From: Salpingoeca rosetta
Taxonomy: Eukaryota > Protista > Choanoflagellata
Direction of reading: 5' to 3'
NCBI GenBank assembly: GCA_033442325.1
Contig: JAWQFM010000009.1
Coordinates: 1,111,729-1,175,728 of the forward strand
DNA length: 64,000 bases
Shown: piece after piece, positions 1-63,216 of the stretch
Layout of the letters: every line of letters starts with the position of its first letter
Numbering within the stretch: the first letter of the stretch is position 1
Notes under the pieces: model-generated
What the model was told of the DNA's origin: nothing
Database searches by the model: none
Seen by the model: the letters and a program-made list of their open reading frames with translations, nothing else
Position numbers and translations under genes: made by a program

Positions 1-3000
1 CTCCCCTTGGCTTCGACCATCGCCTCCCCCTCCACCACTGCGGCCACACCCGCCAACAACAGCAGCAGTGTCAACAGCACGGGTACTACAACTGCCACTA
101 GCACCAGCGCGATGACAACAACAACAACAACAAGCACAAGCAGTGACGGTGGTGGCGATAATTCACTTCCGCTGACGCTGACTGCACAAGGGTTTGAGTT
201 GCGGCTTGCGCACCTGCGTCCATTTCAGCGCGTGCACATTGTGATTGAAGGGCAGGTTGTGCAGGACGTAATCCCACAAGACAAGCTTGTCAACTCCGCA
301 AGCCTGCGCTACGACACAAGCCCCGACAACGAGACCGCCGCGTACCCTGGAAAAGAGTACGCGCTTGACCTTGACGTGACGACGGTGGTTGTCAGCCCCG
401 TTGCCCGCTACGAGGTGACCAGCTTATCCGAGGCTGAGACCCTGGACAACGTGCTCACAATTGGCGAGGAGGCGACCGTGGATGTGCTGTGGAACCTTCC
501 TGAGGGTGAGATGCCGGGCGCGGTGCTGGCGGTGTCCGTGCCGCCGCACACGACGTTCCTCAACGCAACGATAGTTCGCATTGGGCGGTCGATTAGCGGC
601 TCCAATGTTGTGCCATATCAGACGTATGACGACAACTTTGCTGTGCTTCCATCTGACCCAACCGCTGTTCTCATCGACCTGGGTGACCTCAGCAACACCT
701 TCAACAACACCGTCAACCTGCAAGACGACATTCACGTGAGTTGTTTGTGTGTGCGTGTGCGTGTGCGTGAGTTGTGTGCGCGCGCACGTGTGTGTGTGTG
801 TGTGTGTGCGTGTGTATGTTAGTTGTGGTTATACGTTTTCTTATATCTGTTTACCTGTGTGCGTGTGTGTGTTGGACGATCATTTCTCATCTCACCTCAC
901 GCAAACTCGACGACGTTGTTGTGCGCATCGACTTCTCTGCCTTTCCCTGCACGGCTTTCATAACCACAGGTCCGCGTTCGCTTCTTCGTGGACAATGATC
1001 CCGCCAATGCGCTCAACACGTTCATCAACGTTGAGACTGGGCTGGCGTGGCTTGGTTCTGCGCGGTGGGTGGACAGCAGCTATCCCATCAAGATTGCAGA
1101 GCCGCTGGTGTCCAGCTCCGTCTCCACACCAACAGCCCGCCCTGATGCACAGGACCTGCTCACATACACAACCATTGTGCAGCATGACGCTGCTTCAACG
1201 TCCCCGATTTACAGGGTGCGTGCGCATGTGTGTATGTGCATTTGTGCACGTGTTTGTGTGCGTACTTGTATGCGTACTTGTGTGCGCACTTGTGTGCGTA
1301 CTTGTGAGCAGTTTCGTGCTCGTATAGTTGATGTGCATGCATACCCATGCCGCCTTCTCATCCAGCCAACACTCGTGACGTGCGCACACACATGCACTCA
1401 CTCACTCACTCACTCATACTCGCTCACTCACTCACTCACTCATACTCGCTCACTCATACTCGCTCGCTCGCTCGCTCACTCTTCCGCTTCCGCTATTCAT
1501 GCAGGCGACAGTGGTGGTGACCACACCAGCAGAGGTGCAGCTGCAAACGGGTAGCATTGACATCTTCAGCGGAACAGTGCTGTCATCAACCCCAACACTG
1601 CGCGTGGTGAACGCATCTGTGTTTGAGGTTGGGTTTGAGAAGATGAGCGTGCTCGCGAGCGACGGGGACGAGAAGCTGACCATCACATATGACGTCGTGG
1701 TTGTGGATGAGATTCGAGCAAACGAAGACATCATCGTGACGACGACCAACTCGTGGTGGTCCACGCCAACCAACTTTACCCACCCTGGCCGCTTCCGCGA
1801 TGGCTTCAACGACACATCACCCTACTTTGGCGAGACATCACAGCACATCAACCCGGCGAAGCAGAACAGTGTGACCATGTATCTGGATCGCTCCTCCCTC
1901 GAAGACACCATCGGCACGCAAGTCAACGTTGCTGAGGAGCTGGTGTATCGCTCGTGCATCACCGTGCTGGAGGGCCACACCAACGTGTCCCTCGCCATCG
2001 CCATGCACTCTGGACTGGACTTCCTCAACGCCAGCTTGTACTCCGTCGGCGCCGACATCGCAGAGTCGCTGTCCTTTGTTGAAGGCGACATGTTCAACGC
2101 CACAACAGATGACAGCACCGGTGGACCTTTGGTCCTGTTTGCCTTTGGTGAACTCGTCAACACCGCCACGAACGTTGAAGATGATGGTGACGCCATCTGC
2201 ATTGAGCTGGCCGCCCTCGTTGCAAACATGTGCGTATTATTGCGTGTTAGGGAAGTGTGTGTGTGTTGCGTGTTTGCGTGTGTGTGCGTGTGTTTGTGTG
2301 TGTGGTTTGTCTGTGTTGTGTTGTTGCATGTGGTTTGTGTATGTGTATATGTGCGTGTGTTGCGCATGTGTGTGTGTGTATGTGGTTTGTGTGTGTGTAC
2401 AATTGACGCCATGTGTCTCCGTCTGTACCGTTTTGTCTCTCCCTCTCTGTATGTCTCCTGATGTGCGGTTGAGTCGCAGACGTCTGCAATAGCATGCCAT
2501 CGCTCACCCTCTTCCGCGTTGTTGTTTACTAACACTCCCAGCCCTGAAAACATCAACGGGATTGTGCTGCCGGCGACGGCCACGCTCGTGACCGACACGA
2601 CGCAGCTGACATCCAGCACTGAGACTGTGCGCGTCATCGAACCCGTCGTCACCACCGACCCCGTGGCCATCACAATCCCAGGACAGGTGGGTTCCAGCAT
2701 GCGCACAGTCTTGATTAGGCGATTTGCACCACTTGTCTCGTGTCACTCTGCCCATAGCATCTTGCACACTTGCCCTGTTGGCCACACTACAACCACTGTG
2801 GTTTGGGGCCATCGCTGGACACACGCACACTCACACACACATACACACACATGCGCTCGCATTCGACACACACACACACACACACACTCACTCATACGCA
2901 CACACTCACCCCCCCCCCCCACACACACACACCATAGGGCGCTGTGGAAGTGCTGAGCATTGACAGTGAGGCGGTGGATGCTGGCGATGAGGTTTCATTT

Positions 3001-6000
3001 GAGATTACGGTGCGGCACTTGCCATCATCGACCTCCACGACGTTTGACGTGTTCATCGAGGCTCATCTGCCCGACTACACGGCTGTCGTCTCCGTGCAGC
3101 AAGGCACCCTGCCGACCACCATCAACACCACCGTGCCGGGGTATGTCGTGTGGCACCTGCCCAAACTCACGCTGGAGGAAGAGTCCTACACCACGTCCGT
3201 CACTGTCCGCGTACGCAACGACATCATCCCATCTGCCGCCGACCTGAAGTGCGACGTCACCACCACGGCACACTCGTCCCCGCTCGCAGACAACGCAGAC
3301 GCAAAGGCGTTCACCAGCGTTGCAGAGTCGGCTGTTCTCCTCGTCAAAGGTGTCAACGACGACCTGGAACTGGTCAGCACCAGCATCGCCGCCACAGCCG
3401 GGTACGACGTTGCTGTGCACGAGCTCGCCACCTTCCAATACACATTGGTGCTGCCCGAGGGCACCGTGCCGTCCATCACACTCATCATTGACCAGCCGAG
3501 CGATGACAGCCTGCGCCTGGATCGGGTTGAGCTGCATTTTGGCGCAAACGTGGCGTGCGAGGGCGTGCCTGTGCTTGAGGATGCTGCGGGTGCGGTTGAC
3601 CACGTGCTGCAGTTTGACAACTGCGTCAACACGTACGACAACGAGGATGACGACGCTGATCTCATGGTGGTGACCATCGTCACGGTCGTGCAAGATGTTG
3701 TGTCCACGCTTGAGGACCGCAACAAGGCGATGCGCTTCCGCCTGCAGACTGTGCACACACACGGGACGCCGGGCAGCACGCGAAAATCATCGTACATGGA
3801 GACGCTCAGGTTGCAGCTGCCAAACGCGGCAATGGCGCTTGACACAGTGGTGCGCAACCATGTGCTGCCTGGGGACACGCTGCAGTTCGATGCTACTGTT
3901 GAGCAGGATGGTAACTTCCTGGCCCCAATGTTCAACACCAGCCTTGATATTGCCATCCCATCGTCCCTGATTCCCGTGCTTGTGCTGGTCGGCGTGAACG
4001 GCGCGCCGCTCACCGACCACCCGTTCACCCTTCGCGACGGCACCAACGGCACTGCCACGTCCGTGCTGTCCATTCCACTCGCCACCATTCTTCCGGATGA
4101 CACGGCTGCCGTGCGCGTCCTTACTGAGGTTGGCTCCGATGTTGAGCAAGGGCTCGCCATTGCCGCCAACGCCACGCTCACGTTCGACACATCCGAAGGG
4201 TCGCCGACCTACCCTGGCCGCGTGTATGCTGTCGCTGATGACTTCAAGACACTCTACGTGGCAGCGCTCGTCCTGACGCAAGACATTGTCCGCCTCAACT
4301 TTCCAGGCGAAACTGATGTTACAGAGGTGTCCGTGTACGAGCCCCTCACACTTCGCCACACCGTGCGTGTGCGCGGAAGCTATGCGCTGACCACCACCAT
4401 CAGCCTTCCCGCTGGCGGTGGTGCTGGTGCTGGTGCTGGTGGCGGGGACGAGGAAGCCATGATCGTGGACACATGCACGACAGTTTCTGTTGGCGACAAC
4501 GTGCTCATCACCCCTGGTGCGACATCACCAGGCAATGTCGTGCAGCCCACAATTGTGCATGATGCGAACACACACACCATCACGTTGGCGTGGGGCGATG
4601 CCGTGAACGAGGCCACGTCGGCCGTGTACACGCAGGATGACGACATTGTGTACGAGTGCAATGCGCGCGTGCGCAACTTGGTGTGGATCGAAGCTGGTGA
4701 TGTGTTTGCGTTGGGCGGCAACGCAGAATACGCCGTGTTCACGTCCTCGGAGGAGCACATGCTCACCGTGAGCGACCCGGAGCTGGTGTTTGCATCCTTC
4801 ACTCCGTCATTTGGCGCCACAGAGCAATCGCCGGTGACGCCCGTGCAAGCACAGGAGGCTGTAACGTTTGACTTTGCCGTGAACAACTCCCTCGCCGCGA
4901 GCGTCGTTGCTGCCACCGCATTTGATGCGCAGCTGCTGCTGTTCTTGCCGGGAATTTCAAACGCCGTCGTCGCCAGCGCAGACCCGTCAACGCAGCTTGA
5001 GTATGACACAGACTTGGAGGCGTACCGGCTGCTCGTTGACCGCGTCGGCGAAGCGGAGATGTGGACCGTCACCCTCGCCGGCACCGCCATCACGCAACTC
5101 CCCGTGGGCGTGCCCGTTGAGCACTCCGCACAGCTTTCGTGGCTGAGCACAGCGGACCCCACCCGCGAGCTCGCCCGTCTGCACACGGAGGAGCCACCCA
5201 CATCGTGGACCATGACAGTGCGCCATCCACAGCTGGACTTGGCCGTGTACTCCACGCGCACTGTTGGTGGGTGGAGGCGTGTTGCTGGCGACGCACAAGC
5301 TGGTAGCAACAGCAGCCCTGCCCCCGAGGTCACCGTGGGTGGTGTCATCTGGCTCACCCTGACTGTGGATGTGTATGCTGGTTTGCACACGGACCTCAAA
5401 GCGGTGCTGGATGTGCCCGAGGGCTTAGTGCTCGTTGACCACGTTGTGAGCGATGGCCACCCCAACATCGACCTTGGTGCTGGCCCAACCGTTGTTGAGA
5501 CGGGCAGCGCTGACGGCGAGTATGAGTTTGTGTTTGGCAGCCCGCTGGCAACTGCTGAGGACACTGTCGTGCTGAACGTGTACTTGCGGGTGGCAGATGA
5601 CAAGAGCGTCAACTTCAACGGCGCCGTGAAGACCCTGCGTGCGCACCTCGACTACACAGAGTTCACGAACCAAGACGACCAGCAGCTGGACGTGGTGGTG
5701 GTGTACCCGCTCTTGCAGCTCACGGGCGACACGAGCGTGGCAACCGCAGATGCAGGCGACACGATCGTGCTCACGCAGCTCCTCAGGCACACGGATCAGT
5801 CTGAGGCCCCCGCCTACAACATCACCGTGGGCTTGATGGTGCCAGGCGCAGCGCTGCTCACCAACGTGACGGCTGTGCGCTCGATGCAGCACACGGGCAC
5901 CAACGGCACAGTCTTTGTTGAACACGCCTTTGAGCAGTACGAACCAACGCCCATCATCGACCTTGGCTTGCTCAACGAAACTGATGCGGTGGTGGTGACG

Positions 6001-6912
6001 TGGACGTTTGTGGTGCAGCAGCGCGTGCAACCGTCAAGCACGCTTGCCTTTGCCGCAGCAGCAACATACAAGCACGGCTCCCTCACCACCAGCCGCCAAG
6101 AGACGGCCGTTATGGCTCCACTGGACGTGGTGGTTCCTGGTATTCACCTGCAAGCCCCTGGCGAGGACGATGAGGGTCGGGCGCGCGACTACGGCGTCGG
6201 CGATGTCATTCACATGCAGGTTGATATGGACCTGCCTGAGGGCACGCTCCCCGAGCTTGTGGTTGATCTTCACACTACGCCTGGCACGGCAATTGTTGGT
6301 GCCAGCCTCTCTTCGCTCACAGGCCACATCTTTGCCTCTGACAACGAGGGGAGCGTGGCTGTGATGCAAGGCGGCCAGGAGAGTGCGCTGCTTGGCGCTG
6401 ACAGCAACAGAAGGAGACGCCGTGCTTCCGGCAACGATGACGACGATGATGGCGCAATGATGAGCAGTGCTGCCAACGCCACTCAGCGGCTGTTTGATGT
6501 GGAAGCTGACGCCAACCAGCGTGTTTCAGCCGTGCGCGTGCGCGTGTTCAACGTCACGAACAACTTCAACAACGTTGAGGACACCCGGGACCGCCTTGTT
6601 CTCAACGTGACGGTGGCTGTGCTGGACGACGAAGCCATCTCTCGCAACACAACCGTCAATGTTACGGCAAGTGTGTCTGTGCCATGGAGCGCGGCCAGCG
6701 TGGCCGTCAGCCCGACTTACAACATTGGCGAGCCTGCGCTCAACGTTGAGACGTTCTGGGCCTTTGATGACTCGACGGCTGTTCTCGTGTTTGTGCACAC
6801 GATTGCCCACGCCAACAACTCCGACCTGAACGCAGCCAACCTCCACCTCACCTCAAACGTCACAGGTACGGCGCTGTGGGTGTATGTGTGTGTGTGTGTG
6901 TAAGTGTGTAAG

Positions 6913-6974
<62 letters not shown>

Positions 6975-9900
6975 CGAGTGATTTAGTGCTTGAGATGCAT
7001 GTGAGTGTGCGAGAGTGTGCGTGTATGTGTATGTGTGTGCGAGCAGGAGAGTATGGGCTTGAGATGAATGTGGGTGTGTGTGTACCGTCTGTTGCGCGTT
7101 CTCACGATTACCAACTGTTTGATCACCCCACCGTGTTCACCACACAGGCACACTGATTGTGACCACGAGCAACATGACCAATGGAACCGACTGGGTGAGC
7201 AGCCACAGCCTGCGTTTTGTAGTTGCTGTTTGACATGTGCTTTGCGTGTTTCATGCTGCTTGCAAGCACGGCAAATGTCAAATTGATCGGCCTTTTCTTT
7301 CTTTGCTTTCGCTCATGTACGCACGTACGCGCGAAATACAGGATCTTCTTGTTCGCGGTGAGAGCATCGTGGCGTATCATGTGGTGGTCGTGGACAGCGC
7401 GTCGCCACAGGGTGCATCCGTGTGTGTGCAGCCGACAGTCGAGTACAACAACGCAGGAAGCAGCAGCCCGCGTGCATACGCGCAGACGGAGCACCGAGAC
7501 TGCTTCAAACTGCCCGAACCAGCAAGAAGCCGGTGGCAACGGTCCATGTTTGTGACGCTCCTTGCCATTGCGTGTGGCGTGCTGTTCCTCGTGCTGCTCT
7601 TCCTTGCTGTGAGCGAGCGGCGGCGGCGTCGTCGCGGTGGGAAGAACGTGGGCAAGCTGCCCAAGCCAGCCAAGGTGATGGTGCGACCAACGTCACTGAT
7701 TCGCCGACAAGGCTCAGCAGCAGCGTCGTCGCCACGCGACGCGCTTGCCCTTGGCAATGATGACGAGGACATGGACTACCTTGTTGTTGGCGATGACATT
7801 GATCACACATACGCAGCACCGCGAGGGCCGCTGATTGCGCTGGGTGATGGGCTGTACGCTGAGATTGACCAGGTGCTTGAGGCGCACGCTGGTGACGAAG
7901 AGGGTGACTACTACTGCACCATCAACTCGGCGTTTCAGGATGTGTATGAGGACATCAACAGCTTCTATGCCAACGCGCGTGTGCGGCTGCCTGATGGCAC
8001 GTATGCGCAGATGAATCGCTACTTCTTCAATGACGACGGCAAACTACGGCGCAAGAACCGTGACACGAACGATGAGCACATCTACGAAGGTGTGTTTGTG
8101 CTGCATGTGTGTGTGTGTGTTTGTGCTGCGTTTGTGAATGCTGTGTGATGGAGAAGTGCTATGTGCGACTTGAGTGTGTGTGTGTGTGTGCACACACGTT
8201 AGTCTGGGTGGTATTTGTGCTTTGTGTATATGTGTTGTTTGTGAGTATGAGTGAGTGTGTGTTTGCCCTGATGCTGCCTTTCTTGAACTTCTAAAACCCG
8301 CCACCTTTACACCAATCTCACACTGCTTCTCGGCCCGTTTTCTCTTTCCAATGTCGCGTGTGCTTCACGCTGCAATGTCATTGCAGAAATTCCCGAGGAC
8401 GATCCAATCTACGAAGAGATCAAGGATGTGCTCGCGGGCACACGGCCCCGCCAGCCAATGCCTGTCATCCGCACGAAGGACAACCGGCAGCTTGGTCTTC
8501 GCCGCGTGTTCCGGCGCAACAGCGACGGCTCCCTCGTGCCGTGCTTCTACCACGACAGCGGGCTGTATGCCGATGCTGCTGTTGTGCGCACGGAGAATGG
8601 CGAGTATGCTGACGCCTCTGACTTCTTCAAGCGAGACGGGCGCGTGTTTGAGCCGCTGTACGAGGAAGCGCACATTCTGCACGACACTGGCGAGTATGCC
8701 GGGGCCAGGGAGGCCATGTACGACGTTGCCAACCCGTCCCATGACGAATATCTGGATGCCGATGCGATTTACGACATTGGCGAGGCGCAGGGGGACGAGC
8801 GCATGTACGACATGGGAGCAGACGTGCAGACCGACGATCCAATCTACACCATGGGCAACGACAACGAGGAAGGTCTGGATGCCATTTATGACATGGGGCA
8901 GGAGACAGGCACAGATGCGCAGTACGCGCTTGGCAACACCGACAATGCGGATGCTGATGGTGACGCCACGTACGATGTGGGCAACGCTGATGCCGTGTAT
9001 GGCGCTAGCGCAGATGACGACGACACGCTTGAACCCGTTTACGATGCCGGGCAGGAAGGACTGAACAGCGCAGATCCCCTGTACGATGTCGCCAACCGCC
9101 CTGGAACTGCAGGCGGCGGCGGCGGCGGCGCAGATGGCGGTGGTACCAGGGTTCGCAAGCGTGACAGTGAGCCAACCTATGACACCGCCACATTCCGCCG
9201 GCGTGCGTCTGATCAGCCGCCGCCGCTGAGCGGGCAGCGTCTGGGCAGTGCCGCAGACACATACGATCTTGGGGATGGAATGGCGCTTGGGGGTGGTGGA
9301 GATGGCGACGCAACGTATGACATTGGCAACGAGGAAGGGGACGCGCTTGTTGGCGGCAACAGCCATGGTGCTGGTACGACTACCGATGGTGATGATGATG
9401 CGGTGTACACGCTCGGAGACGAGATGGACGGGTTCATCGATGACCACCCACTGTCCAGCGTCGTCAGCAGCGGTCAATCCTCGCACCGCCACCACTATGG
9501 CGGGCGGTCGTCAGCGGGGCCCATGATTGTTGCACCAGAGCCATCCATCCGCAACAGAGGCGACGGTGATGATGGCAATCTCTCTGTGGCAGCGTCGAGT
9601 GACGTGTACTCCATTGCCAAGTCCGACGCAAGCCGCACCGGTGGTACCATGGGCCATCAACACCGCCACCACCAGCACCACCACCGCCACCAGTTCCACC
9701 GCCACCAGCAGCAGCAGCAGCAGCACGAGGCGACGTATGCACCATACCCGCTGCAGGATGGCGCTGATGACATTTACGACGTGAGTCCCCTCAACAACGC
9801 CGTTGCGCCGGAGGACGTGGACGAGGAAGGTGATTACGACGCGCAAACGACGAGGAAGGGCAGCAGCAACATGAGCAACGCTGGCAGCGACGGCGCTGAC

Positions 9901-10539
9901 GATTTGTATGCGATGGCCAACAAGTTTGGATACAGCGGCGGCGGTCGTGACAGCATTGATGAGCTGCCGCTGCCGCCACCACCGCCACTGCCACTGCCCA
10001 TGATGGGAGCAAACACCGCAGGCAACAGCAACACCAGGACACGGCCGGCGAACACGTCGCCGCAACAGGAGAAGCGCGCACAGCAGCGGTACAAGCCCGT
10101 GTACGAGGCGCTGAACGAAGCAGAGGACGATGAGAGCGACGCTGACGATGGCTACCAGCGCGCAGACAGCACAGACGAGGACGAGGACGAGGACAGCGTG
10201 TATGGCCACGGCCGCTCCGGTAGTGAGCGAGGTGACTCGTTTGACGCAGATGCGCTGGAGACGCGTGCTGGCCCCAACAACACGTTGGTTGTGAAACGCC
10301 GCGGGACACGCGACGTGGAGGACATTTATTCCGTGATTCAAAAGGCGACGACACCGCCCCCACCGGACCTGCCGTCCCGCTCGCACTCGTGCGCGTCATC
10401 GGTGGTGTCGATCCAGTCGCTTGAAGCATCGCCAAAGGGACAGCGCAGCGTGCGGCCGCCCCCACGCCTCCGAGCCCCGAGCGGACAAGTGAAGCAGAAG
10501 AGCACCATCTCCATGGAGTGGGATCCACACATGCAGTAG
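1..10539 (+). CDS. Giant type-I membrane protein (>2900 aa, 5'-truncated): alternating DUF11/fimbrial-D2-like Ig-fold repeats, one TM helix, long Tyr-motif-rich cytoplasmic tail without a kinase
   Basis: Exons <1-735, 970-1215, 1505-2229, 2542-2686, 2938-6865, 7148-7194, 7342-8089 and 8387-10539 join in frame with GT-AG introns (8727 nt). Ectodomain repeats: TS..T...(I/V)GE......LPEG and EP......DAGD...H...S. TM segment MFVTLLAIACGVLFLVLLFLAV (~7546-7611) is followed by RRRRRR. The tail carries about 35 Tyr motifs. Confidence 0.85.
2527..2541 (+). other. Canonical branch point TACTAAC plus 3' splice site of gene 1 intron 3
   Basis: The sequence tactaacactcccag ends at the AG (2540-2541) that restores the reading frame. 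Confidence 0.6.
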
Positions 10540-11399
10540 GCAGTAGCAGCATCCGCTGTTGTGTCTGTGTGTGTGTCTCTGTGTGTGCGTGTGTGTGTGA
10601 AAGCAGCTTGCGCGGAACACGAGGGCGGGTTGTGTGATGTTGTGTGATGTTGCGTGTGTTGTCGGGTTTTGTGACAGTGCAGCTGAGCTGTACAGAAGAC
10701 ATGTGTGTGTTGTGTTGTGTCGAGAAGAAGCATGTACAAATTTGATTCATTGATTGAACAAGGTCCATCCATAGCGACAGCCAATTAAAAGTGAAGCAAC
10801 AACAGAACGAACAAGGACTTGTATCACATCATCACGAAACACAGCAGAAATGAACACCAAGCCTGCGAGAGTCGTGTGAACAAGTACATGCGAAACAGAC
10901 AAGAGCATGGGAACAGAACCAGCACACACAAGCACACACACACACACACAGCCGTGTCATAGGATACATGAAGCAGTCATACATGAACACATGAATACGT
11001 TAAAATGAGCAAAACACGGACAAGGCACAACGACAAAAGCAACACATCAGCATGCTCTGTGCCCGGAAACGAACAAAAGAACACCGGAGCAGCTGTTGAA
11101 GACAAAGCACAAACCACAAACGACTAACCACCGGCGAGAAGTTGCACGCAATGGACAACATGTGCACACACACGCGCGCGCGGAAAGGCGCACTCGCACA
11201 ACTGCGTCTCGCAGAACCACAACGACAGCGCAGAGAAAGCAAACCGCTCATGACGACTGTCACAGGGCGCGGCCTTGAACAATAGCTCGCCAGTGCACGT
11301 GTCACACCAGCGGGTCTGCATGGCTCAATCCTTTGTGTCTACACACCATTGTATCGAGTTATTCTGCGACACAACAGCGTCTGTACACCATCACGATGT

Positions 11400-40116: not shown

Positions 40117-40763
40117 GATTGGCTGTGTTGGTTGGTGTGGTCGGTTTGGTTGCCTGCTCGCTTTTCCTTGTTGTGTGAGAAGGCAAAATTGCCTTTGCGC
40201 GTCGTCAATTTTGACCTTCAAGGTGGGCGAGCACAAAAAGAAGAAGAGCCAAAAGCAGAGCTCTGTTGTGTTTTGTGTGTGTTTTACCCCTTGCTTCTTG
40301 TTCCACACAAACAAAAGAGCCAAAAACGCAGCAACCACCAGCACCAGCGCTGCGCTCCGCCTTGCTTGCTTGCTGACAGAGTGTTGTTTTGGGGTGTGTC
40401 CACTCAGCTTCTTGAGCGCCACCCGTCCGTGTCGCGGTTCACACCCTTTCGCTTGTCGTCGCAAGTGGGTTGCAGTGCCAAGCACCCATCGCTGCCCCTC
40501 GAGTTGGCAGTGAGACCCTTCACCACTTTACACGACTTCCAGGGCGTCCTCTTCCTTCCTGGTGTTTTGGTTGGTTGGTTGGTTCGTGTGCTGAAGGTGG
40601 CTGTCGACACTCTTGTATTCCACCAAACACACACACACACACACAAACACACACATACACACATCAACACACACATACATACACACACACACATACACAC
40701 ATCAACACACACACACACACATACACACACATACACAGACACATACACACAAGCACCACCACC

Positions 40764-41810
40764 ATGTCGGAGGAGAGCATCAACAGCACAGACGGCCCCA
40801 CGCTGCCGCCGAAAGCGTCCCACCAGCACAACCGACAACAGCAACAACAGCAGCAGGCAGCTACCACAGCAACAGCTACAGCAGCAACACGACAGAAGCA
40901 GAGCGACCGCTTTGTGGAGGTCACGCTGGAGCGTGATCCCAAAGTTGGCTTTGGCTTCTCCATCTACGGCGGGCAAGTCATGCCGGGCGCCCTCATCATG
41001 CTCCCCGTGCGCATCTGCAAAATGAAGCCCAACACTCCGGCCAGCCTGAGCGGCAAAATCAAGATCGACCACCGCATTGTCGCCATCAACGGGACGGACG
41101 TGTCCAGCTCCAGCCACGGCGACGTGGTGCGCTTGCTCAAGGCGTCTCCAGAGACACTCGTGCTTCGCCTGCAGGACGACATTGAGGAGGCGCAGTCCAT
41201 CCTCAAGCACCAGCTCAAGGCCACGGGCCTCAGAAACGCAGACCAGGACAAGCGACGGCAGCAGCAGCAACAACAACAACAGCAGCAGCAGCAGCAAAAC
41301 ACCAAGGAGAGCGCTGGCCAAGAAGCGCAGGGCAGCAAGAGTGAAAGCGGTGGGAAGGCAAACAACGAGGCTGCACAACAGCAGGCGTCTGTGCTCAAAC
41401 CCGGCGCACAGGCGTATCTGCCGGGCAAGACACAGGATGCCACGGACGCATCGTCGTCGGCAGCGCAGGCGGTGAACGAAACCGTCCGCATCATGTACAA
41501 CTTCAACGGGTCAGACCCCTCTGAGCTGACGTTGCAGCGCGCAGACCTCGTGCACGTGAGCATCCGGCGCAGTGACGGGTGGTGTCTTGGCCGCTGCTTC
41601 CGGACAGGGCAGCAGGGGCTGTTCCCAGGTAACTTTGCATCGAAGGTGCGCCTGAAGCCCATGCAGCAGCAGGCGGAGAGCATATACGCGGAGATCCAGC
41701 ACGTGGCGGGCGACTCTGCAGAGAACATCTACGAGGAGCTTGGCCAGGAGCGCGCCGGCAGCAACAAGGACAGCAGACCGCGCACACCAACATACCAGCA
41801 CCTGCCACCC

Positions 41811-41842
<32 letters not shown>

Positions 41843-43924
41843 GTCATCTGGGAAGCAGGAGGAGGACCCATACGGGCAACCATACCCGACAGCACAACAG
41901 CAGCAGCAGCAGCAGGGGCAACAAGAGGAGATCTACCAGCCCATGCGTGAGCAGGTGGTGCGTCGCACGCAGGACGCCATTGAGCTTGCAAACGGCGACA
42001 TTTACGCGGTAGTGGCAAAACCGCCTGTCCGGCGGCCATACGAGGAGGAGGCGGTGTACTCCACGGCCGGCCACGTGGACGAAGCGGGGCCGCAGTATGT
42101 GTATGACGATGATGACGACAGCATGCTGTATGCCAAGCTGGATGACGTGGACGGCGATGGCGCCCCGCCCCCAGTCCCATCTCGAAAGTCAGTAGTGCTA
42201 GTTGTGTGTATGTGTGTATGTGTGTATGTGTGTTTTGTGTGTGTATGTGTGTTTTGTGTGTGTATGTGTGTATGTGTGTGTGTGTGCGTGTGCGTGTGTG
42301 TGTGTGTGTCCATGCGCACTGTATGTGTGGGTGTTGTGCGTTCAAGCGTATGCACACGTGTGCCTGTGCGCCAACGCTTGACCAACTGACCAACCAACCA
42401 ATCGATGCACGTGTCCACAGGTACGACGCCACGCTGCTGCCGGCACTACAGCAGACGCGAGCGGACAGCATCTACGAGTCTCTGTATGACAGCGTCGACG
42501 ACAGGAGTGTCGCTTACGTCTCAACATCAGACATGGTACGCAGCCAAGCTGCGCTGTGTCGTGCATTTCGTGTGTACGCGCGTGTGTGCGATGCTAATTG
42601 CATACATGCACGTTGGGCCACTGGTTCCTTGTTATTGCATGTTGAGCATCTGCTGTTGCATCATCCTCCACATCGCCTTTCGTGTGCACCTTCACCCACT
42701 CCAGCCCCTACTCGCGTTCCTACTCACTCCTCCCTCCGCTCAACCATCAACCATCAACCATCAACCACCGCTCCCCTGCACCCCCCTCCCACCTGCAGGG
42801 CACTGTGGACGACACGTACGCCAGCCTGCCCTCGTCCCTGCTCTACGCTGCGCTGCCCATGGTCCCACCGGTACGTGGCCTCGATGCACGACATCATGCC
42901 GCTCGCTGTTCTGGATGTTGTCGCGTTTGCATCAATGGCTGGTTGGTTGGGTGGTTGGTTGATTGGTTGCTTGGGTGGTGGTGGTGGTTTGGGAGGGGGG
43001 GAAGCTGGCTATGCATTGGTTGTGGTCGTGGTGCGTACAAGCCTCAAGCACCATTCCTTAGCACCATCCGAGTTAATCGCCCATACAACTTCGCCACCCT
43101 CCTACCCCACCACCCTTCCCACTGACTCACACCACGCTTCCTCTGCTTCCCTCCCCCCCCTGTATGGCGGGCAGGCGGTTGAGGAGGATGTGAGCGAGCG
43201 CAACCCGGACCAGAACATGGCGCCCGCCGTTGATCTTGCATCCCATCCGTCGCAGCAGCACCAACACAGCAGCCAGCAGCAGCAGGGGCAGCAGGAAGGC
43301 GCAAACGGAAGGGAAGGCGCAGGCAGCGACAGCCACAATGGTACTGGTGATGGTGGTGCTGTGAATGGAACATCACCTGCCTCGGCACCATCATCGTCGT
43401 CGTCACTGCCATCACCATCATCGCCGCTGGAGGGAGGGACGGATGGTGGCGTTGTGCGCAAACTCACGCGCAAGGAGAAGAGGGAGCAGAAGAAGAAGGA
43501 GAAGGAGCAGAAGAAGAAGGAGGCGGAGGAGAGGAAAGAGAAGAAGAGGAGGGACAAGGAGCAGAAGAAGAGGGAGAAGAAGCAGAAGAAGGAAGCAGAG
43601 GAGAAGAGGAAGAAGGACGACAAGGAACAGAAGAAGCTTGAGAAGCAGCGCAGCAAGCAGGAGGTGCGGCCGCGATCGGGCTCGCGTCGGTTCACATTCC
43701 GCCGCTCAAAGGGAACGCAGCAGCAGGAGACGGAGAAGGAGTTGAAGGAGAAGGATGAGGTGGAGGGGAAGGGGAAGGGGGTGGACAGAGGAAAGGAAGA
43801 CGTTGGTGATGGTGGTTTGAAGGGTGCTGATGAGGGAACACCGGCTGTGGAGGTTGGCGGCGTTGAACAGCAAGACACCACAGCAACAGAAACAGCAGCG
43901 GCAGCAGCAGGAGCCAGCGAGTAG
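40764..43924 (+). CDS. PDZ + SH3 adaptor with multiple tyrosine motifs and Lys/Glu-rich tail
   Basis: Exons 40764-42187, 42421-42535, 42799-42870, 43175-43924. PDZ: VTLERDPKVGFGFSIYGG...IVAINGTDV...HGDVVRLLK. SH3: MYNFNGSDPSELTL...DGWCLG...GLFPGNF. Confidence 0.85.
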
Positions 43925-59565: not shown

Positions 59566-59605
59566 CTCGCTTGACGACACAAAATACGAAGAAGGGGTTG
59601 TTGCC
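59566..59605. promoter_or_regulatory. Possible RFX X-box-like sites upstream of CFAP57
   Basis: Imperfect palindrome CTCGCTTGACGAC (59566-59578) and half-site GTTGCC (59600-59605), 130-170 nt upstream of a ciliary gene ATG. The match is imperfect. Confidence 0.3.
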
Positions 59606-59682
59606 TCTCCCACAAACAACCCATCATCACCACAACCGCATACACTTGCACGTCGGATCAGCAGCGACACCAGACACACACA

Positions 59683-59729
<47 letters not shown>

Positions 59730-59733
59730 CGAG

Positions 59734-61109
59734 ATGGTGTCCACCATCGTCGAGCCATCCTTTGTGTTTGGCTTGAAGGGTGATGTGAGCGACAACATCT
59801 GCTATTTGGACGAGCAGAACGTCATCTACCCGGCCGGCTCCTCCGTTGTCGTGTACAACATCCAACAGAAGACACAGCGGTTCATCCACGGGACCGAGGG
59901 CTCGGCGGGCTTTACCGCGCTCGCTGTCAGCCCAAACAGGCGCTATGTCGCCATAGCAGAAAAGGCCGAACGCGCCTCCGTCACCATCTACGATCTGCAT
60001 TCCCTCAAGAAACGAAAGGTGCGTGTTGTGTGTGTTTTGTGTGTGTATGTATGTATGTGTGTGTGTGTGTGTGCTTTGTGTATTTGTGCGCGCTGTTGCA
60101 TGTGTGAAAATGATTCACTTGTGCTGCTCGTACCCCTCTCCCTCATCTCCATTCTTTTTTTCTGCACCCTGTCGTGTACACACACTCATCTACGCGCACC
60201 ACCACACTCATCTACGCACACACACACACACACATGCACACACACATGCACGCACCACCACACAATCCAACCAACCCTCCAACCCTCCAACCAAAACATC
60301 ACAAACCCGCAGTTCCTGAGCGATGCCACATCAGATTGTGAGGAGTTTGTGTGCATGACGTTCAGCCCCGACTCCAAGTACTTGGTGACGCTGGGTGGTG
60401 CACCAGAGTGGTTCATGCACTACTGGGCGTGGGAGAAGAGCCAAGGCCCCATGGCCGTCACAAAGTGCTCGCTGGACCCCAGCATCCCCGTGTACCGCGT
60501 CACCTTCAACCCACAGGACAACACGCACCTCTGCGTGACCGGCAGCAACACGCTCAAGATGTACCGCTACACAGAGGGCAACTTCAAGCAGCTTGCGTTC
60601 CAGAAGATTGAGGGCCAGGACTATTTGAGCCAGTGCTGGCTGGCAGAGGACGCGGTTGTATGCGGCACTGCATCCGGCAAGATCCTCCTCTTTGTTGGCG
60701 GCGAACTCAAGGCGGAAATGAACGTGTCGGAACGCGTGACCTACGTGGCCGCCCTGAACAACGGGTTTGCGTGCGGCACAGCGAGCGGCAACGTCATCGT
60801 GTACGAGGCGACAGAGGACGAGGAGCTGTACAAGCAGGCGCAGGAAGTGCCGCTTCCCGCCGACATCGCAAACACAACACAGAGCGTCCACTGCATCGCC
60901 GTGTCGCCATCGGAAGACGCCCTCGTGTGCACAACGAAGGAGGGCCAGATCTACACCCTCAATCTCGCAGCCACAGAATCAGACATCCTCAGGGTGCGCG
61001 AAGCATGGGTTGCACGTGTGTGTGTGTGTGTGTCTGTGTCTGTGTCTGTGTCTGTGTCTGTGTCTGTCTGTCTGTCTGTACGTGTGTATGGGTGTTTGTA
61101 TGTGCGTTT

Positions 61110-61153
<44 letters not shown>

Positions 61154-63216
61154 TGATCGTATTGTCGATGTGTGCTGTCGGATTCGACCATCCTTGCAAC
61201 CCGTTTTTTCTCAACAAACATCACACGCACACACACATACACACACATACACACACATACACACACATACACACACGCGCGCATACAGGGGGACCAGCCT
61301 GTTGGGCTGCGGCTGCTGTCTGACCTGTTCCACCACCGCGCCATCACGGGGCTCGACGTGGCCGTGCGCAAACCGCTCATCGCCACCACCTCCCTGGACT
61401 GCAGCATCCGCGTGTGGAACTACCACACACACGCGCTGGAGCTTGTCAAGTACTTCTCCGAGGAGGCACACTCCATTGCCATCCACCCGAGCGGCCTGTT
61501 TGTGCTCGTCGGGTTTGGCGACAAGCTGCGGCTCATGAGTCTGCTGATGGACGATATGCACACCATCAAGGAGTTTAGCATCCGCGAGTGCAAGGAGTGC
61601 CGCTTCAGCAACGGCGGCCACCTCTTTGCAGCAGCACAGGGCAACGTCATTCAGGTCCGGGGCATGCGGTGTCGTTGCTCGTGTGGGCTGCGATGGCAAT
61701 GATAACACTAGCATAGGCGTGTGTGTCTGTCTGGCTGTATCTGTGTGCGTGTGTCTGTCTTTCTTTTTGTCTCTTGTCTGTGTGCGTGTGTCGAGCTGTG
61801 TGTATATGTCCCTCTGTCCCTCTGTTCGTATTTGCATTACCATCACTGGCACTTTGTACCGACACAACCACATCCGTGAGACCATGCACCACCCCTCTCC
61901 ACGCCAATCCGCCCTGCATTTGCATCCCGGCTCACTCCCAATCGCCGCGGACATGTGTGCGATCATCTGCACAGATCTATTCAACGTGGACGTTCAAGCC
62001 TGTCGGGAGCCTCAAGGGCCACAGCGGTCGCATCCGGTCCATCACCTGGAGCCCAGATGACACGCGCATTGTGTCCACAGGCGCTGACGGCGCCGTGTAC
62101 GAGTGGTCCACGCTCGAACGCCGCCGCATCAACGAGTGCGTGCAGAAGACGTGCAGCTACACTGGCGCAACACTCGACCCAGAGACGGGCGCTATTTATG
62201 CTGTCGGGTCCGATAAGATGCTGAAGCGCATCCACAACAGCGACATGGAGCTCGAGGTGCCCGTGAGCGCACGTGCCACGTCCGACCTGGTGCTGACGCA
62301 AGTGATCGTGTCGAGTTCCGGCAAGATGCTCCTGGCGGCGACGGCGCAGGGCAGTGTCAGGTCGTACAAGGTGCCGCTGGAGCTCAAGGCGGAATGGACG
62401 TCCACCTGCACGCATTTCGGGGGCGTGACGCGGCTGCGCATTTCGCCAGACGACCAAACACTCTTCAGCGTCGGCGAGGACGGATGCTTGTTCCTGCACA
62501 AGCTCACAGACAAGGTGTGGTGGGAACAGGAGCGCGAATCACTCTTGCAGAACTTGTGTGTGCATGACAGCATGTGCATGAGCGAGCATGTGTTATGAAC
62601 AACAACATAATAGCTTCAACTCACCTTTATGCATGCTCGAATGTTCTCTTTTGTGAATGCACGTATGTGTGTGTGTGTGTGTATGTGCAGGACGGGCGAG
62701 CGGGAAAGCGCCGCGCCCTCAGCGATTGGGCCGACGAAATCCTCATAACCAAATCGGACCTCGAGGAGAAGAACACGCTCATGAGCGAGGTTTGTGCGCA
62801 CTGCTGCTGATGTTGCTGTTGCTGTTGTGGTAGTGGTGGTGGACGAACAACGATGCGTATCGACACGCCATCCTCACACTCACACGCACACTCAAACTCA
62901 CACTCGCACTCACACACACACGCACACTCAAACTCGCACTCACGCTCACGCTCACTCACTCACACACACACACACACACACACACACTCTCTCTCTCTCT
63001 CGCACTCACACACACACACACACAACATGCGTCGCACCTCCGCAGCTGAAGCGGCGGGTTGAGGAGCTGCAGATGGCGAGCGAATACCAACTCCGGCTCA
63101 AGGACATGAACTACAACGAGAAGATCAAGGAGATCACAGACAAGTTCACGCAGGAGAAGGAGGACCTCAAGCGCCAGCTGCAGTCAGGTGTGTGTGTGTG
63201 TGCTTGTGCCGTTGTA

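What the first reader, a model, noticed from the sequence alone, without database searches (positions are those of the whole stretch)
1..10539. Giant kinase-less receptor joining a bacterial-adhesin-like ectodomain to a phosphotyrosine docking tail
Seen: >1900 aa of extracellular repeats, one TM helix, and a ~880-aa cytoplasmic tail with about 35 acid-preceded Tyr motifs (IYEEI twice, LYAEI, VYEDI, IYSVI, VYEAL) and no catalytic domain. Established: choanoflagellates have rich tyrosine kinase/SH2 networks, and acidic-I-Y-E-E-I is an optimal Src substrate and SH2 ligand. Inference: a non-catalytic tyrosine-phosphorylated receptor, analogous to animal immunoreceptors, that couples adhesion or prey/surface contact to SH2 signalling.
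Basis: partly seen in the sequence, partly recalled or inferred. Interest (0 to 1): 0.8.

Follow-up and report, generated by a model that had tools for sequence, protein, structure and literature searches.

The report
Giant kinase-less choanoflagellate receptor, tyrosine tail
A real, expressed 4835-residue surface protein of the choanoflagellate Salpingoeca rosetta joins a stalk of bacterial pilus-like modules to an enzyme-free tail whose tyrosines are unusually conserved, which makes it a good but still untested candidate for an early relative of animal immune-type signalling receptors.

Summary
Window 1-10539 (+) carries the last eight exons, 2908 residues, of one annotated 4835-residue protein. 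The part in the window has 2010 extracellular residues, one membrane helix (7546-7614) and an 875-residue tail with 44 tyrosines and no domain hit.

- **Ectodomain:** at least nine ~315-residue two-domain units related to bacterial fibrillar-adhesin and pilin stalks (CLIPPER/DUF11). The model has pLDDT 89 and matches 9IFR at Z 12.9. The choanoflagellate units lack the isopeptide Lys/Asp/Asn residues and often carry a cysteine pair.
- **Tail:** tyrosine contexts are non-random. An ocean-metagenome ortholog keeps 75% of the tyrosines against 40% of other residues. It also keeps an exact ITAM-consensus pair, YEEI-x6-YEEI, split by the same intron.
- **Family:** paralogs and relatives share 11-16 copies of acidic-Y-x-hydrophobic-(A/G), never with Phe or Trp in place of Tyr.

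Phosphorylation, SH2 binding and the ligand remain untested. The scan flagged many similar kinase-less receptors in this genome, including this gene's paralog. A 2016 paper described YxxP-tailed ones. I rate it a new variant of a known kind.

The parts
1..735 (+). Exon (first in window; the gene continues upstream, P0001 residues 1-1927 lie off the window). Thr/Ser-rich linker and end of stalk unit 4.
   Evidence: Frame-1 ORF; donor CAC|GTGAGT at 736; translation identical to P0001.
970..1215 (+). Exon, stalk units 4/5.
   Evidence: Inferred GT..AG junctions; identical to P0001.
1505..2229 (+). Exon, stalk unit 5.
2542..2686 (+). Exon, end of unit 5 and start of unit 6.
   Evidence: The junction 2686|2938 is read from spliced contigs in X4 and X6.
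2938..6865 (+). Large exon (1309 codons): stalk units 6-9. Each unit is about 315 aa, a CLIPPER/DUF11-like CnaA-type sandwich followed by a second pilin-like sandwich. Unit spans in nucleotides: 2648-3915, 3868-4791, 4816-5724, 5671-6771.
   Evidence: Iterated HMM search places 9 units in P0001 922-3822. The AF2 model of unit 6 has pLDDT 89 and pTM 0.81. VIA-align gives 9IFR Z 12.9, rmsd 2.2 A over 121 aa; BcpA Z 13.4; CppA Z 11.8 for domain B. The family profile hits 9IFR at E 1.5e-6. Coordinates.
7148..7194 (+). 47-nt microexon inside the last half unit (an A-type domain).
   Evidence: Spliced contigs X4 record 3 and X6 record 5; GT..AG after shifting the boundaries.
7342..8089 (+). Exon holding the juxtamembrane half unit, the TM helix and the membrane-proximal tail (YLVV, YAAP, YAEI, YY, YEDI, YANA, YAQM, and the first half of the ITAM-like pair).
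7546..7614 (+). Single transmembrane helix, followed by an SERRRRRRGGK positive-inside signal.
   Evidence: Kyte-Doolittle 19-residue mean up to 3.0, the only such segment in the window's part of the protein and in the whole 4835-aa protein; coordinates.
8074..8421 (+). ITAM-consensus element E-H-I-YEEI-PEDDPI-YEEI, split by the intron 8090-8386.
   Evidence: Strict pattern [DE]xxYxx[LI]x6-8Yxx[LI] occurs once; at least one match arises in 0.86% of shuffles. Sequence, spacing and intron position are conserved in the Tara ortholog L004.
8387..10539 (+). Last exon: the rest of the tail and the stop codon (10537-10539).
8707..9420 (+). Central array of acidic-x-(I/V/T/L)-Y-(D/A/T)-(I/V/M/L)-(G/A)-(N/Q/D) motifs; most successive tyrosines within it are 7-16 residues apart.
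   Evidence: 13 Y-x-hydrophobic-[AG] motifs in the whole tail against 0.83 expected, 0 of 5000 shuffles. The array is not a DNA tandem repeat. The same motif class occurs in four other family tails.
9964..10008 (+). Polyproline stretch LPLPPPPPLPLP, a candidate SH3/EVH1/profilin ligand.
   Evidence: Read from the sequence. Only loosely conserved in the ortholog.
10273..10347 (+). Conserved island PNNTLVVKRRG-x-DVEDIYSVIQK.
   Evidence: Nearly identical in the ortholog.
10510..10536 (+). Conserved C-terminus S-M-E-W-D-P.
   Evidence: Conserved in the ortholog P0060.

Best explanation
This is the 3' two-thirds of one S. rosetta gene for a 4835-residue type-I surface glycoprotein.

Shown:
- A signal-peptide-like start, about five EGF-like modules and a Thr-rich linker.
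- A long rod of at least nine and a half tandem two-domain beta-sandwich units related to bacterial fibrillar-adhesin and pilin stalks, without their isopeptide residues.
- One membrane helix and a compositionally disorder-like (Asp/Gly/Ala/Ser/Pro-rich) acidic 875-residue tail without any catalytic or other known domain.
- The tail tyrosines are the best-conserved residue type, apart from the single Trp.
- The tyrosines fall into three zones: a membrane-proximal Yxx(I) cluster with an exact ITAM-consensus YEEI-x6-YEEI pair plus YAAP, YxN and YxxM sites; a central array of about 13 Y-x-hydrophobic-G/A motifs; and conserved distal islands.

Inferred mechanism:
- The stalk holds the distal EGF and head region far from the membrane, where it engages a particle, surface or neighbouring cell.
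- Clustering or force then lets cytoplasmic tyrosine kinases of the Src, Abl or Syk-like type, abundant in choanoflagellates, phosphorylate the tail.
- The phosphorylated tail recruits many SH2 or PTB proteins at once and links contact to the cytoskeleton or to uptake.
- In that sense it would work like an animal non-catalytic tyrosine-phosphorylated receptor or transmembrane adaptor.
For: - One transcript: contig X6 record 5 (10,051 nt) runs 2601-2686 | 2938-6865 | 7148-7194 | 7342-8089 | 8387-8600 and beyond; X4 record 3 shows the same last junctions. The stranded raw reads of X22 nearly all have the first mate on the - strand, which fits a + strand RNA.
- The gene model equals annotated protein P0001 with 0 mismatches.
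- No enzyme domain in the tail or the whole protein.
- Tyrosine context is far from shuffles.
- Ortholog on Tara metagenome contig L004: 33 of 44 Tyr identical (75%) against 40% for other residues, binomial p 2.5e-6, with one Y-to-F change. The ITAM-consensus pair and the intron that splits it are conserved.
- The Y-x-hydrophobic-[AG] motif occurs 13, 16, 13, 11 and 11 times in five family tails (S. rosetta x2, M. brevicollis, two environmental) against fewer than 1 expected. There are 0 Phe/Trp-substituted copies although the tails hold 45 Phe.
- The central array is not a recent DNA repeat.
- Language-model features of the helix plus tail lie nearest to PAG/LIME, SCIMP, vaccinia A36R and HCMV UL135 clusters. 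Scores are 0.78-0.88, so this is a lead only.
- Background: M. brevicollis has 136 tyrosine kinases and 123 SH2 proteins (PMC4342544), and the substrates of pre-metazoan FAK, SRC and ABL orthologs are stated to be unknown (PMC5043372).
Against: - There is no phosphorylation, localisation or binding data for this protein or any relative, and no S. rosetta phosphoproteome was found.
- The dominant motif (hydrophobic at +2, Gly/Ala at +3) fits no SH2 or PTB ligand class known to me, so its reader is unknown and need not be phospho-dependent.
- The ITAM-consensus pair is absent from the paralog and M. brevicollis tails, and I did not show that S. rosetta has a tandem-SH2 reader.
- The ligand-binding head is not identified: residues 370-920 give only weak DUF11-like features.
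- Raw-read coverage is low (35 and 2 reads).
Confidence: 0.55

Rival explanations
1. A structural surface rod (glycocalyx, theca, ECM or cell-cell adhesin). The tail anchors it to the cortex through phosphorylation-independent binding of the Y-x-hydrophobic-G/A and polyproline motifs, so no signalling role is needed.
For: The ectodomain is built from stalk modules of bacterial fibrillar adhesins and carries 80 N-glycosylation sequons. The main tail motif matches no known SH2 class. Polyproline and conserved non-Tyr islands (PNNTLVVKRRG, SMEWDP) exist.
Against: Tyr is never replaced by Phe or Trp in 64 motif copies across five tails, and only once in 44 positions between orthologs. That would be unexpected for a purely hydrophobic contact. 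The acidic flanks are typical kinase-substrate contexts. YEEI, YAAP, YxN and YxxM sites and the ITAM-consensus pair are textbook phospho-ligands.
Confidence: 0.25
2. The tyrosine motifs are sorting signals that drive endocytosis or recycling of a scavenger or phagocytic receptor through adaptor complexes, not docking sites for SH2 proteins.
For: Nine Yxx[LIV] sites fit the YxxPhi form. Choanoflagellates are phagotrophs, and acidic clusters often accompany sorting signals.
Against: One or two signals suffice for sorting; 44 tyrosines and a 13-copy array do not fit. The dominant motif has Gly or Ala at +3, where YxxPhi needs a bulky hydrophobic residue. The paralog tails have almost no Yxx[LIV].
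Confidence: 0.1
3. An artefact: bacterial contamination, a fused gene model, or a low-complexity tail without function.
For: The closest named domain is bacterial (DUF11/CLIPPER). A 2025 survey treated its eukaryotic isopeptide-domain hits as likely contamination (10.1101/2025.04.25.650565).
Against: There are seven GT..AG introns, four of them read from spliced transcripts. The gene lies on a 1.69-Mb contig and includes EGF-like modules. Relatives exist in M. brevicollis, a second S. rosetta locus and environmental eukaryote-like contigs with the same intron. Tyr-specific conservation argues against a functionless tail.
Confidence: 0.02

Closest known systems
Bacterial and archaeal fibrillar-adhesin and pilin stalks built from CLIPPER (DUF11, PF01345) and pilin-type beta-sandwiches (PDB 9IFR, BcpA 3RKP, EbpB 9M00, CppA 5XCB)
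   Same: Tandem ~315-aa two-domain units alignable with bacterial proteins such as P0010, which has 9 DUF11 hits and sits in an operon with OEP and HlyD-like secretion genes. Domain A superposes on 9IFR at Z 12.9 and 2.2 A over 121 of 123 residues; domain B on CppA at Z 11.8.
   Different: The Lys/Asp/Asn and Lys/Asn positions of the putative isopeptide triads are absent in every choanoflagellate unit aligned, against roughly half to two-thirds of the other units; only the Glu is kept. A Cys pair appears in 10 of 14 units. The anchor is a eukaryotic TM helix plus a long cytoplasmic tail, not LPXTG, OmpA or type I secretion. The gene has spliceosomal introns and EGF-like modules. The protein's own Pfam score is below the cut-off (21.8 vs 24.6 bits).
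Animal non-catalytic tyrosine-phosphorylated receptors and ITAM receptors (Fc receptor gamma, CD3 chains; Draper/MEGF10 engulfment receptors). From my own knowledge.
   Same: No intrinsic enzyme, single-pass topology and a conserved tail tyrosine motif set that includes one exact ITAM-consensus element. Like Draper/MEGF10 it has EGF-like modules outside.
   Different: No sequence homology was shown. The ectodomain is about 3900 residues rather than small Ig domains. The tail is 875 residues with 44 Tyr. Most motifs are of an undescribed Y-x-hydrophobic-G/A type. Phosphorylation and a tandem-SH2 reader are untested.
Transmembrane adaptor proteins (LAT, PAG/Cbp, LIME, SCIMP) and viral mimics (vaccinia A36R, HCMV UL135)
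   Same: A membrane helix followed by a disorder-like multi-tyrosine scaffold. These are the nearest clusters by language-model features (scores 0.78-0.88, lead only).
   Different: Those proteins have almost no ectodomain and far shorter tails. The similarity is compositional and motif-level, not homology.
S. rosetta transmembrane proteins with YxxP tails, PTSG_05573, PTSG_12435 and PTSG_12436 (PMC5043372)
   Same: Same organism and same idea: kinase-less TM proteins whose cytosolic regions carry repeated tyrosine motifs, proposed as pre-metazoan SH2 (Crk) docking sites.
   Different: Different ectodomains (DUF5011, C2, EGF) and motif (YxxP). This protein has a single YxxP (YAAP). It does not match those three proteins' described ectodomains or YxxP motif counts; its own accession was hidden by the tools, so I could not search that paper for it. 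An accession search for two of its relatives found no paper.
Teneurins (PMC13018210)
   Same: A precedent for bacterial surface-protein architecture reused as an adhesion receptor in the choanoflagellate and animal lineage.
   Different: Unrelated fold (YD shell or toxin cage), type II topology, no tyrosine-array tail.
Integrin alpha-subunit leg (calf-1/calf-2)
   Same: The two-domain unit superposes on alphaV residues 598-956 at Z about 12.7.
   Different: rmsd is 6-7 A at about 10% identity. I read this as a generic tandem beta-sandwich resemblance, with no sequence signal.

Membership tests
CLIPPER / DUF11 (PF01345) | Sequence scores above the Pfam gathering threshold | tested here: not met
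   Best hit is 21.8 bits against a 24.6 cut-off, on residues 8-110 of the large exon; TIGR01451 gives 15.9 vs 24. Homologs P0002, P0004 and P0010 do pass, and the family profile hits the 9IFR sequence at E 1.5e-6. This makes it a remote homolog.
CLIPPER / DUF11 (PF01345) | CnaA-like Ig-type beta-sandwich fold | tested here: met
   AF2 model pLDDT 89. 9IFR matches at Z 12.9, rmsd 2.2 A, 121 aligned of 123; BcpA at Z 13.4.
CLIPPER / DUF11 (PF01345) | Intramolecular Lys-Asn isopeptide with a catalytic Asp (present in many but not all members, per 10.1101/2025.04.25.650565) | tested here: not met
   In 14 aligned choanoflagellate units, Lys 0/14, Asp 0/14 and Asn 0/14 at the three columns, against 50, 65 and 61 of 97 in the other units. 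Per protein, P0001 has 0/7, 0/9 and 1/9. Model geometry could not be inspected.
Bacterial fibrillar adhesin | Tandem stalk repeats plus a distal adhesive domain plus a bacterial sorting or anchor signal | tested here: not met
   Stalk repeats are present. The distal domain is unresolved. The anchor is a eukaryotic TM helix and tail, and the gene has introns.
Non-catalytic tyrosine-phosphorylated receptor (functional class) | Surface receptor without an intrinsic catalytic domain | tested here: met
   Only subthreshold EGF hits in the whole 4835 aa and none in the tail. Single TM with positive-inside residues.
Non-catalytic tyrosine-phosphorylated receptor (functional class) | Conserved cytoplasmic tyrosine motifs | tested here: met
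   33 of 44 Tyr identical in the ortholog against 40% background. The motif array is shared by five tails.
Non-catalytic tyrosine-phosphorylated receptor (functional class) | Tail phosphorylated by cytoplasmic (Src-family) kinases, with recruitment of SH2 proteins | not testable with these tools
   No S. rosetta phosphoproteome was located; the supplement search for tail peptides was empty.
ITAM-bearing receptor | [DE]xxYxx[LI]-x6-8-Yxx[LI] in the cytoplasmic tail | tested here: met
   EHIYEEIPEDDPIYEEI. Chance of at least one strict match in shuffles is 0.86%. Conserved with identical spacing in L004.
ITAM-bearing receptor | Read by a tandem-SH2 kinase (Syk, ZAP-70 or Shark type) after dual phosphorylation | not tested
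   No tandem-SH2 kinase of S. rosetta was examined. Scan notes mention only Syk-like kinase domains in a FERM-SH2 protein. PMC4342544 leaves open when Syk and Shark arose.
S. rosetta YxxP docking proteins (PMC5043372) | Several YxxP motifs in the cytosolic region | tested here: not met
   Only one YxxP (HTYAAPR) in 875 residues.

The most novel reading that the evidence does not exclude
A choanoflagellate-wide family of giant receptors recycled a bacterial pilus or adhesin stalk, swapping isopeptide cross-links for disulfides, and coupled it to tyrosine-phosphorylated docking tails. This member carries a functional pre-metazoan ITAM, and the family-wide acidic-Y-x-hydrophobic-G/A array defines a new phosphotyrosine-reader specificity. 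Immunoreceptor-style contact or prey sensing without a receptor kinase would then predate animals.
Probability: 0.25. Interest if true: 0.85.

Novelty: new variant of a known kind. Interest (0 to 1): 0.62.

Why it matters
Choanoflagellates carry as much tyrosine-kinase, phosphatase and SH2 machinery as animals, yet their kinase substrates and receptors are essentially unknown (PMC5043372 says so for FAK, SRC and ABL).

- **A defined candidate.** This gene gives a concrete, expressed, evolutionarily constrained substrate and receptor. It has a conserved ITAM-consensus element and a repeated motif of unknown reader. Both can be tested in S. rosetta, which is genetically tractable (reverse genetics in PMC11984502).
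- **Bacterial-type modules in a eukaryote.** CLIPPER/DUF11-type adhesin modules exist in bona fide intron-bearing eukaryotic genes. A recent survey limited to proteins of 1280 residues or fewer could not have seen them. In this lineage the fold persists without the isopeptide residues.

Tried and rejected
- Self-BLAST of the ectodomain found no internal repeats even at E=100. The units are too divergent, and only iterated profiles revealed them.
- The word-index search with the 1309-aa exon gave nothing because the real protein lies outside the length band.
- Pfam and NCBIfam gave only subthreshold hits.
- The Foldseek ranking was led by integrin alpha legs. I read these as generic tandem sandwiches once VIA-align showed tight single-domain matches to pilins and 9IFR.
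- TRF found no DNA-level repeat under the tyrosine array, so it is not a recent expansion.
- P0001's tail does not BLAST-align with the paralog tails; only the motif class is shared.
- I looked for published phosphorylation data and for the relatives' accessions in papers and found none.
- Neighbouring genes (PDZ-SH3, WD40 and others) show no kinase or SH2 linkage.
- Nck-type (YDxV), Grb2-type and ITIM readings of the central array were considered and dropped, because +3 is Gly or Ala and -2 is not I/V/L/S.
- The unit tree is unrooted and a quick search only, so I make no donor claim.
Full report
**1. What is there**

The + strand of window 1-10539 holds long open frames separated by short TG/CA-microsatellite stretches, the look of exons and introns. 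I laid two raw RNA-seq runs and two sets of assembled contigs on 2601-8600. That gave one spliced contig of 10,051 nt (X6 record 5) covering 2601-2687, 2940-6860, 7143-7193, 7341-8087 and 8385-8600 and running on at both ends. A second run (X4 record 3) showed the same last three junctions. After shifting each boundary to its equivalent GT..AG position, the introns are 2687-2937, 6866-7147, 7195-7341 and 8090-8386. One consequence is a 47-nt microexon at 7148-7194 that no ORF scan shows.

The three upstream introns (736-969, 1216-1504, 2230-2541) were inferred from frame and splice consensus. The joined coding sequence is 8727 nt and translates to 2908 residues without an internal stop. An exhaustive HMMER search returned a 4835-residue database protein, P0001. 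Its last 2908 residues are identical to my model. It lies on a 1.69-Mb contig and is held by NCBI, UniRef and EukProt.

The organism is Salpingoeca rosetta. The paralog P0014 is PTSG_13117 of that species, and earlier scan notes on this genome say the same. The raw reads of X22 nearly all have the first mate on the - strand, as expected for a + strand RNA in a standard stranded library.

**2. Check of the observation**

The window's part of the protein has 2010 residues before the only strong hydrophobic segment, at window 7546-7614. That segment is followed by SERRRRRRGGK, and then by an 875-residue tail.

- The tail has 44 Tyr (5.0% against 2.2% in the ectodomain) and is rich in Asp, Gly and Ala.
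- The first IYEEI only exists after splicing exon 7342-8089 to exon 8387-10539.
- Against 5000 composition-preserving shuffles, the residues around Tyr are far from random: hydrophobic or Thr at -1 is 30 against 9.6, D/E/A at +1 is 27 against 12.4, upstream acids 56 against 32.5. No shuffle reached any of these values.
- No Pfam or NCBIfam family matches the tail at E<=1. The whole protein gives only two subthreshold EGF hits near the N-terminus.

The main correction is that the protein is much larger than the window shows.

**3. The ectodomain**

BLAST self-comparison sees no repeats. An iterated profile started from one stretch finds nine consecutive units of about 315 residues in P0001 between 922 and 3822. 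A weak extra half unit lies at 3826-3929, next to the membrane. The same unit tiles the paralog PTSG_13117 (15 units), M. brevicollis MONBRDRAFT_37818 (11 units), several environmental proteins and clearly bacterial proteins. One bacterial example is P0010. It has nine DUF11 hits above threshold and sits beside outer-membrane efflux and HlyD-like genes, the setting of a type I secreted giant adhesin.

An alignment of 111 units gave an AlphaFold model with mean pLDDT 89 and pTM 0.81, made of two beta-sandwiches.

- **Domain A** superposes on the crystal structure of a CLIPPER (renamed DUF11) domain, 9IFR, at Z 12.9 and 2.2 A over 121 of 123 residues. It also matches the CnaA-type domains of the Gram-positive pilins BcpA, EbpB and SpaD.
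- **Domain B** matches pilin domains such as CppA at Z 11.8.
- The unit profile also finds the 9IFR sequence at E 1.5e-6.
- The integrin alpha-leg matches that head the Foldseek list have rmsd 6-7 A. I read them as generic.

**4. A difference from the bacterial modules**

The paper that solved 9IFR shows a Lys-Asn isopeptide catalysed by an Asp, and notes that some DUF11 domains lack it (10.1101/2025.04.25.650565). In my alignment the bacterial-type units mostly carry Lys, Asp and Asn at the corresponding columns of domain A. They carry a Lys, Glu and Asn set in domain B. For domain B the triad is my reading of the alignment columns, not a solved bond. The 14 choanoflagellate units have none of the Lys, Asp or Asn residues and keep only the Glu. 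Ten of the 14 have a Cys pair in domain B.

Counted per protein, the split is clean: P0010 has 10/10, 13/13 and 13/13, while P0001 has 0/7, 0/9 and 1/9.

A quick, unrooted tree of 85 units puts 15 of the 16 choanoflagellate units, together with triad-less environmental units, in one group (SH-aLRT 92). That group nests among intermediate and triad-bearing groups. Units at equivalent positions in different species pair up, so the array is old. I make no claim about donor or direction.

The same paper dismissed its eukaryotic isopeptide hits as probable contamination. It could not see proteins longer than 1280 residues. The present genes are unquestionably eukaryotic, but they do not restore the isopeptide claim, since the residues are missing.

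**5. The tail: evidence for function**

Three independent lines bear on this.

- **Family-wide motif.** The tails of P0003 (28 Tyr), P0014 (29 Tyr), the environmental P0007 (18 Tyr) and a further environmental gene on L001 (23 Tyr) are otherwise barely alignable or unalignable. All carry 11-16 copies of Y-x-(L/M/F/I/V)-(A/G) after an acidic run, against fewer than one expected. P0001 has 13. In all 64 copies the aromatic residue is Tyr, never Phe or Trp, although the tails contain 45 Phe.
- **An ortholog.** A word search with the tail found P0060. It is the last exon of an ortholog on a Tara Oceans metagenome contig (L004) and on a second ENA contig. The preceding ORF on L004 ends in the same way, and the intron interrupts the same codon of the first YEEI. 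In a global alignment of the two tails, 42% of the S. rosetta residues are identical. For Tyr the figure is 33 of 44 (75%), the highest of any residue type apart from the single Trp, with one Tyr-to-Phe change. The binomial p is 2.5e-6 and Fisher's is 4.6e-6.
- **Conserved named elements.** These are HxYA(A/Q)PRGPL, GDGLYAE(I/V)DQV, YHDSGLYA, PTYDTATF, LY(A/S)MANK, DVED(I/V)Y(S/A)VI, PNNTL(V/I)VKRRG and the C-terminal SMEWDP.

The sequence D(E/D)H(I/V)YEEIPEDDP(I/V)YEEI is also conserved. It satisfies the strict ITAM consensus [DE]xxYxx[LI]-x6-8-Yxx[LI]. Such a match arises in 0.86% of shuffles of this tail and is absent from the paralog tails. The central array is not a DNA tandem repeat, so the motif recurrence is maintained at the protein level.

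**6. How it most likely works**

Shown: a type-I, heavily glycosylatable (80 sequons) rod-like surface protein without enzyme activity, whose cytoplasmic tyrosines are under selective constraint.

Inferred: the tyrosines are phosphorylated by cytoplasmic kinases after ligand-driven clustering or force, and the tail then acts as a multivalent scaffold.

- The membrane-proximal zone offers Src-SH2-type (YEEI x2, YAEI, YEDI), Abl/Crk-type (YAAP), Grb2-type (YANA) and p85-type (YAQM) sites.
- The central array has a reader I cannot name.
- Hydrophobic residues at -1 in this protein, against Asp at -1 in the paralogs, hint at different kinases. That is speculation.
- Language-model features of the helix plus tail lie nearest to clusters of PAG/LIME, SCIMP, vaccinia A36R and HCMV UL135, all tyrosine-phosphorylated membrane scaffolds. 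The scores (0.78-0.88) are below the level that counts as evidence.

I put 0.55 on the docking-receptor reading. A phospho-independent structural anchor gets 0.25, a sorting-signal reading 0.10, and an artefact about 0.02.

**7. Relation to what is known**

The idea of kinase-less choanoflagellate membrane proteins with tyrosine-motif tails is published for YxxP proteins PTSG_05573, PTSG_12435 and PTSG_12436 (PMC5043372). This protein has one YxxP and different ectodomains from those three, although I could not search that paper for its own accession. Accessions of its M. brevicollis relative and S. rosetta paralog occur in no searchable paper.

This scan has flagged several other tyrosine-tailed receptors in the same genome, the same tail in another window, the upstream EGF part, and what appears to be the paralog's 14-module ectodomain. 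The class is therefore recurrent in S. rosetta. Three things are particular to this gene:

- the bacterial-type stalk without isopeptide residues;
- the quantitative proof of Tyr-specific constraint;
- the conserved ITAM-consensus pair and the family-wide Y-x-hydrophobic-G/A array.

No published phosphoproteome of S. rosetta was found. The one kinase-inhibitor study used anti-pTyr blots only, and its supplements hold none of the tail peptides.

**8. Limits**

- The N-terminal 1927 residues lie outside the window and were read only from the database protein.
- The head region (370-920) is unresolved.
- Isopeptide absence rests on alignment columns, not on model geometry.
- The environmental relatives are assigned to eukaryotes from their intron-like gaps, composition and similarity, not from taxonomy.
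- Expression level and condition are unknown beyond 35 against 2 reads in two runs.

Noticed in passing
window 7148-7194: A 47-nt microexon, flanked by 282-nt and 147-nt introns, lies inside the last extracellular half unit. It is visible only in spliced contigs, and without it the frame between ectodomain and TM exon is lost.
   Followed up: yes
window 736-969, 1216-1504, 2230-2541, 2687-2937, 6866-7147, 8090-8386, 10560-10599: Most of these introns, and the start of the 3' UTR, carry long (TG)n/(CA)n microsatellites, which translate as the CVCVCV runs seen in ORF scans.
   Followed up: partly
window 2601-8600: Two raw RNA-seq runs of the same study, read to similar depth, gave 35 reads (X22) against 2 reads (X21) on this gene. 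This may be condition- or cell-type-dependent expression; the sample identities are coded.
   Followed up: no
window 40416-42386 (+): A long ORF encoding PDZ and SH3 domains (E 2e-11 and 8e-11), a scaffold-type gene 30 kb downstream with no evident link to the receptor.
   Followed up: no
window 59575-61320 (+): An ORF with WD40 beta-propeller hits (MABP1/WDR62-like, E 5e-12).
   Followed up: no
L001 6060-11216: On a marine metagenome contig (SOLA station), the ORF after the closest ectodomain homolog P0002 carries a TM helix and a ~740-aa tail with eleven (V/I/T)YGL(A/G)-type motifs. The gaps between the same-strand ORFs look like short introns, so these may be pieces of one giant eukaryotic gene.
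   Followed up: partly
P0011 (Fabomonas tropica transcriptome, 3442 aa): An ancyromonad transcriptome protein made of the same two-domain units keeps the domain-A Lys/Asp/Asn set (5/7, 9/10, 8/10) but lacks the domain-B Lys and Asn. It could be a separate eukaryotic acquisition or prey-bacterium contamination.
   Followed up: no
P0001 residues 1-370 (upstream of the window): The annotated start has 54 residues before a signal-peptide-like MLLFFLLASCLQAQVLA, so the true start may be the internal Met. About five EGF-like Cys patterns and a poly-Thr linker follow.
   Followed up: partly
window 10510-10536: The C-terminal S-M-E-W-D-P is conserved in the Tara ortholog and contains the tail's only Trp. 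It may be a distinct terminal ligand motif.
   Followed up: no
window 4034 and 7493 (tables 7-8): A second, - strand contig (7576 nt, depth 151) shares only 18-21 nt with the gene at two places, probably chance or low-complexity overlaps.
   Followed up: no
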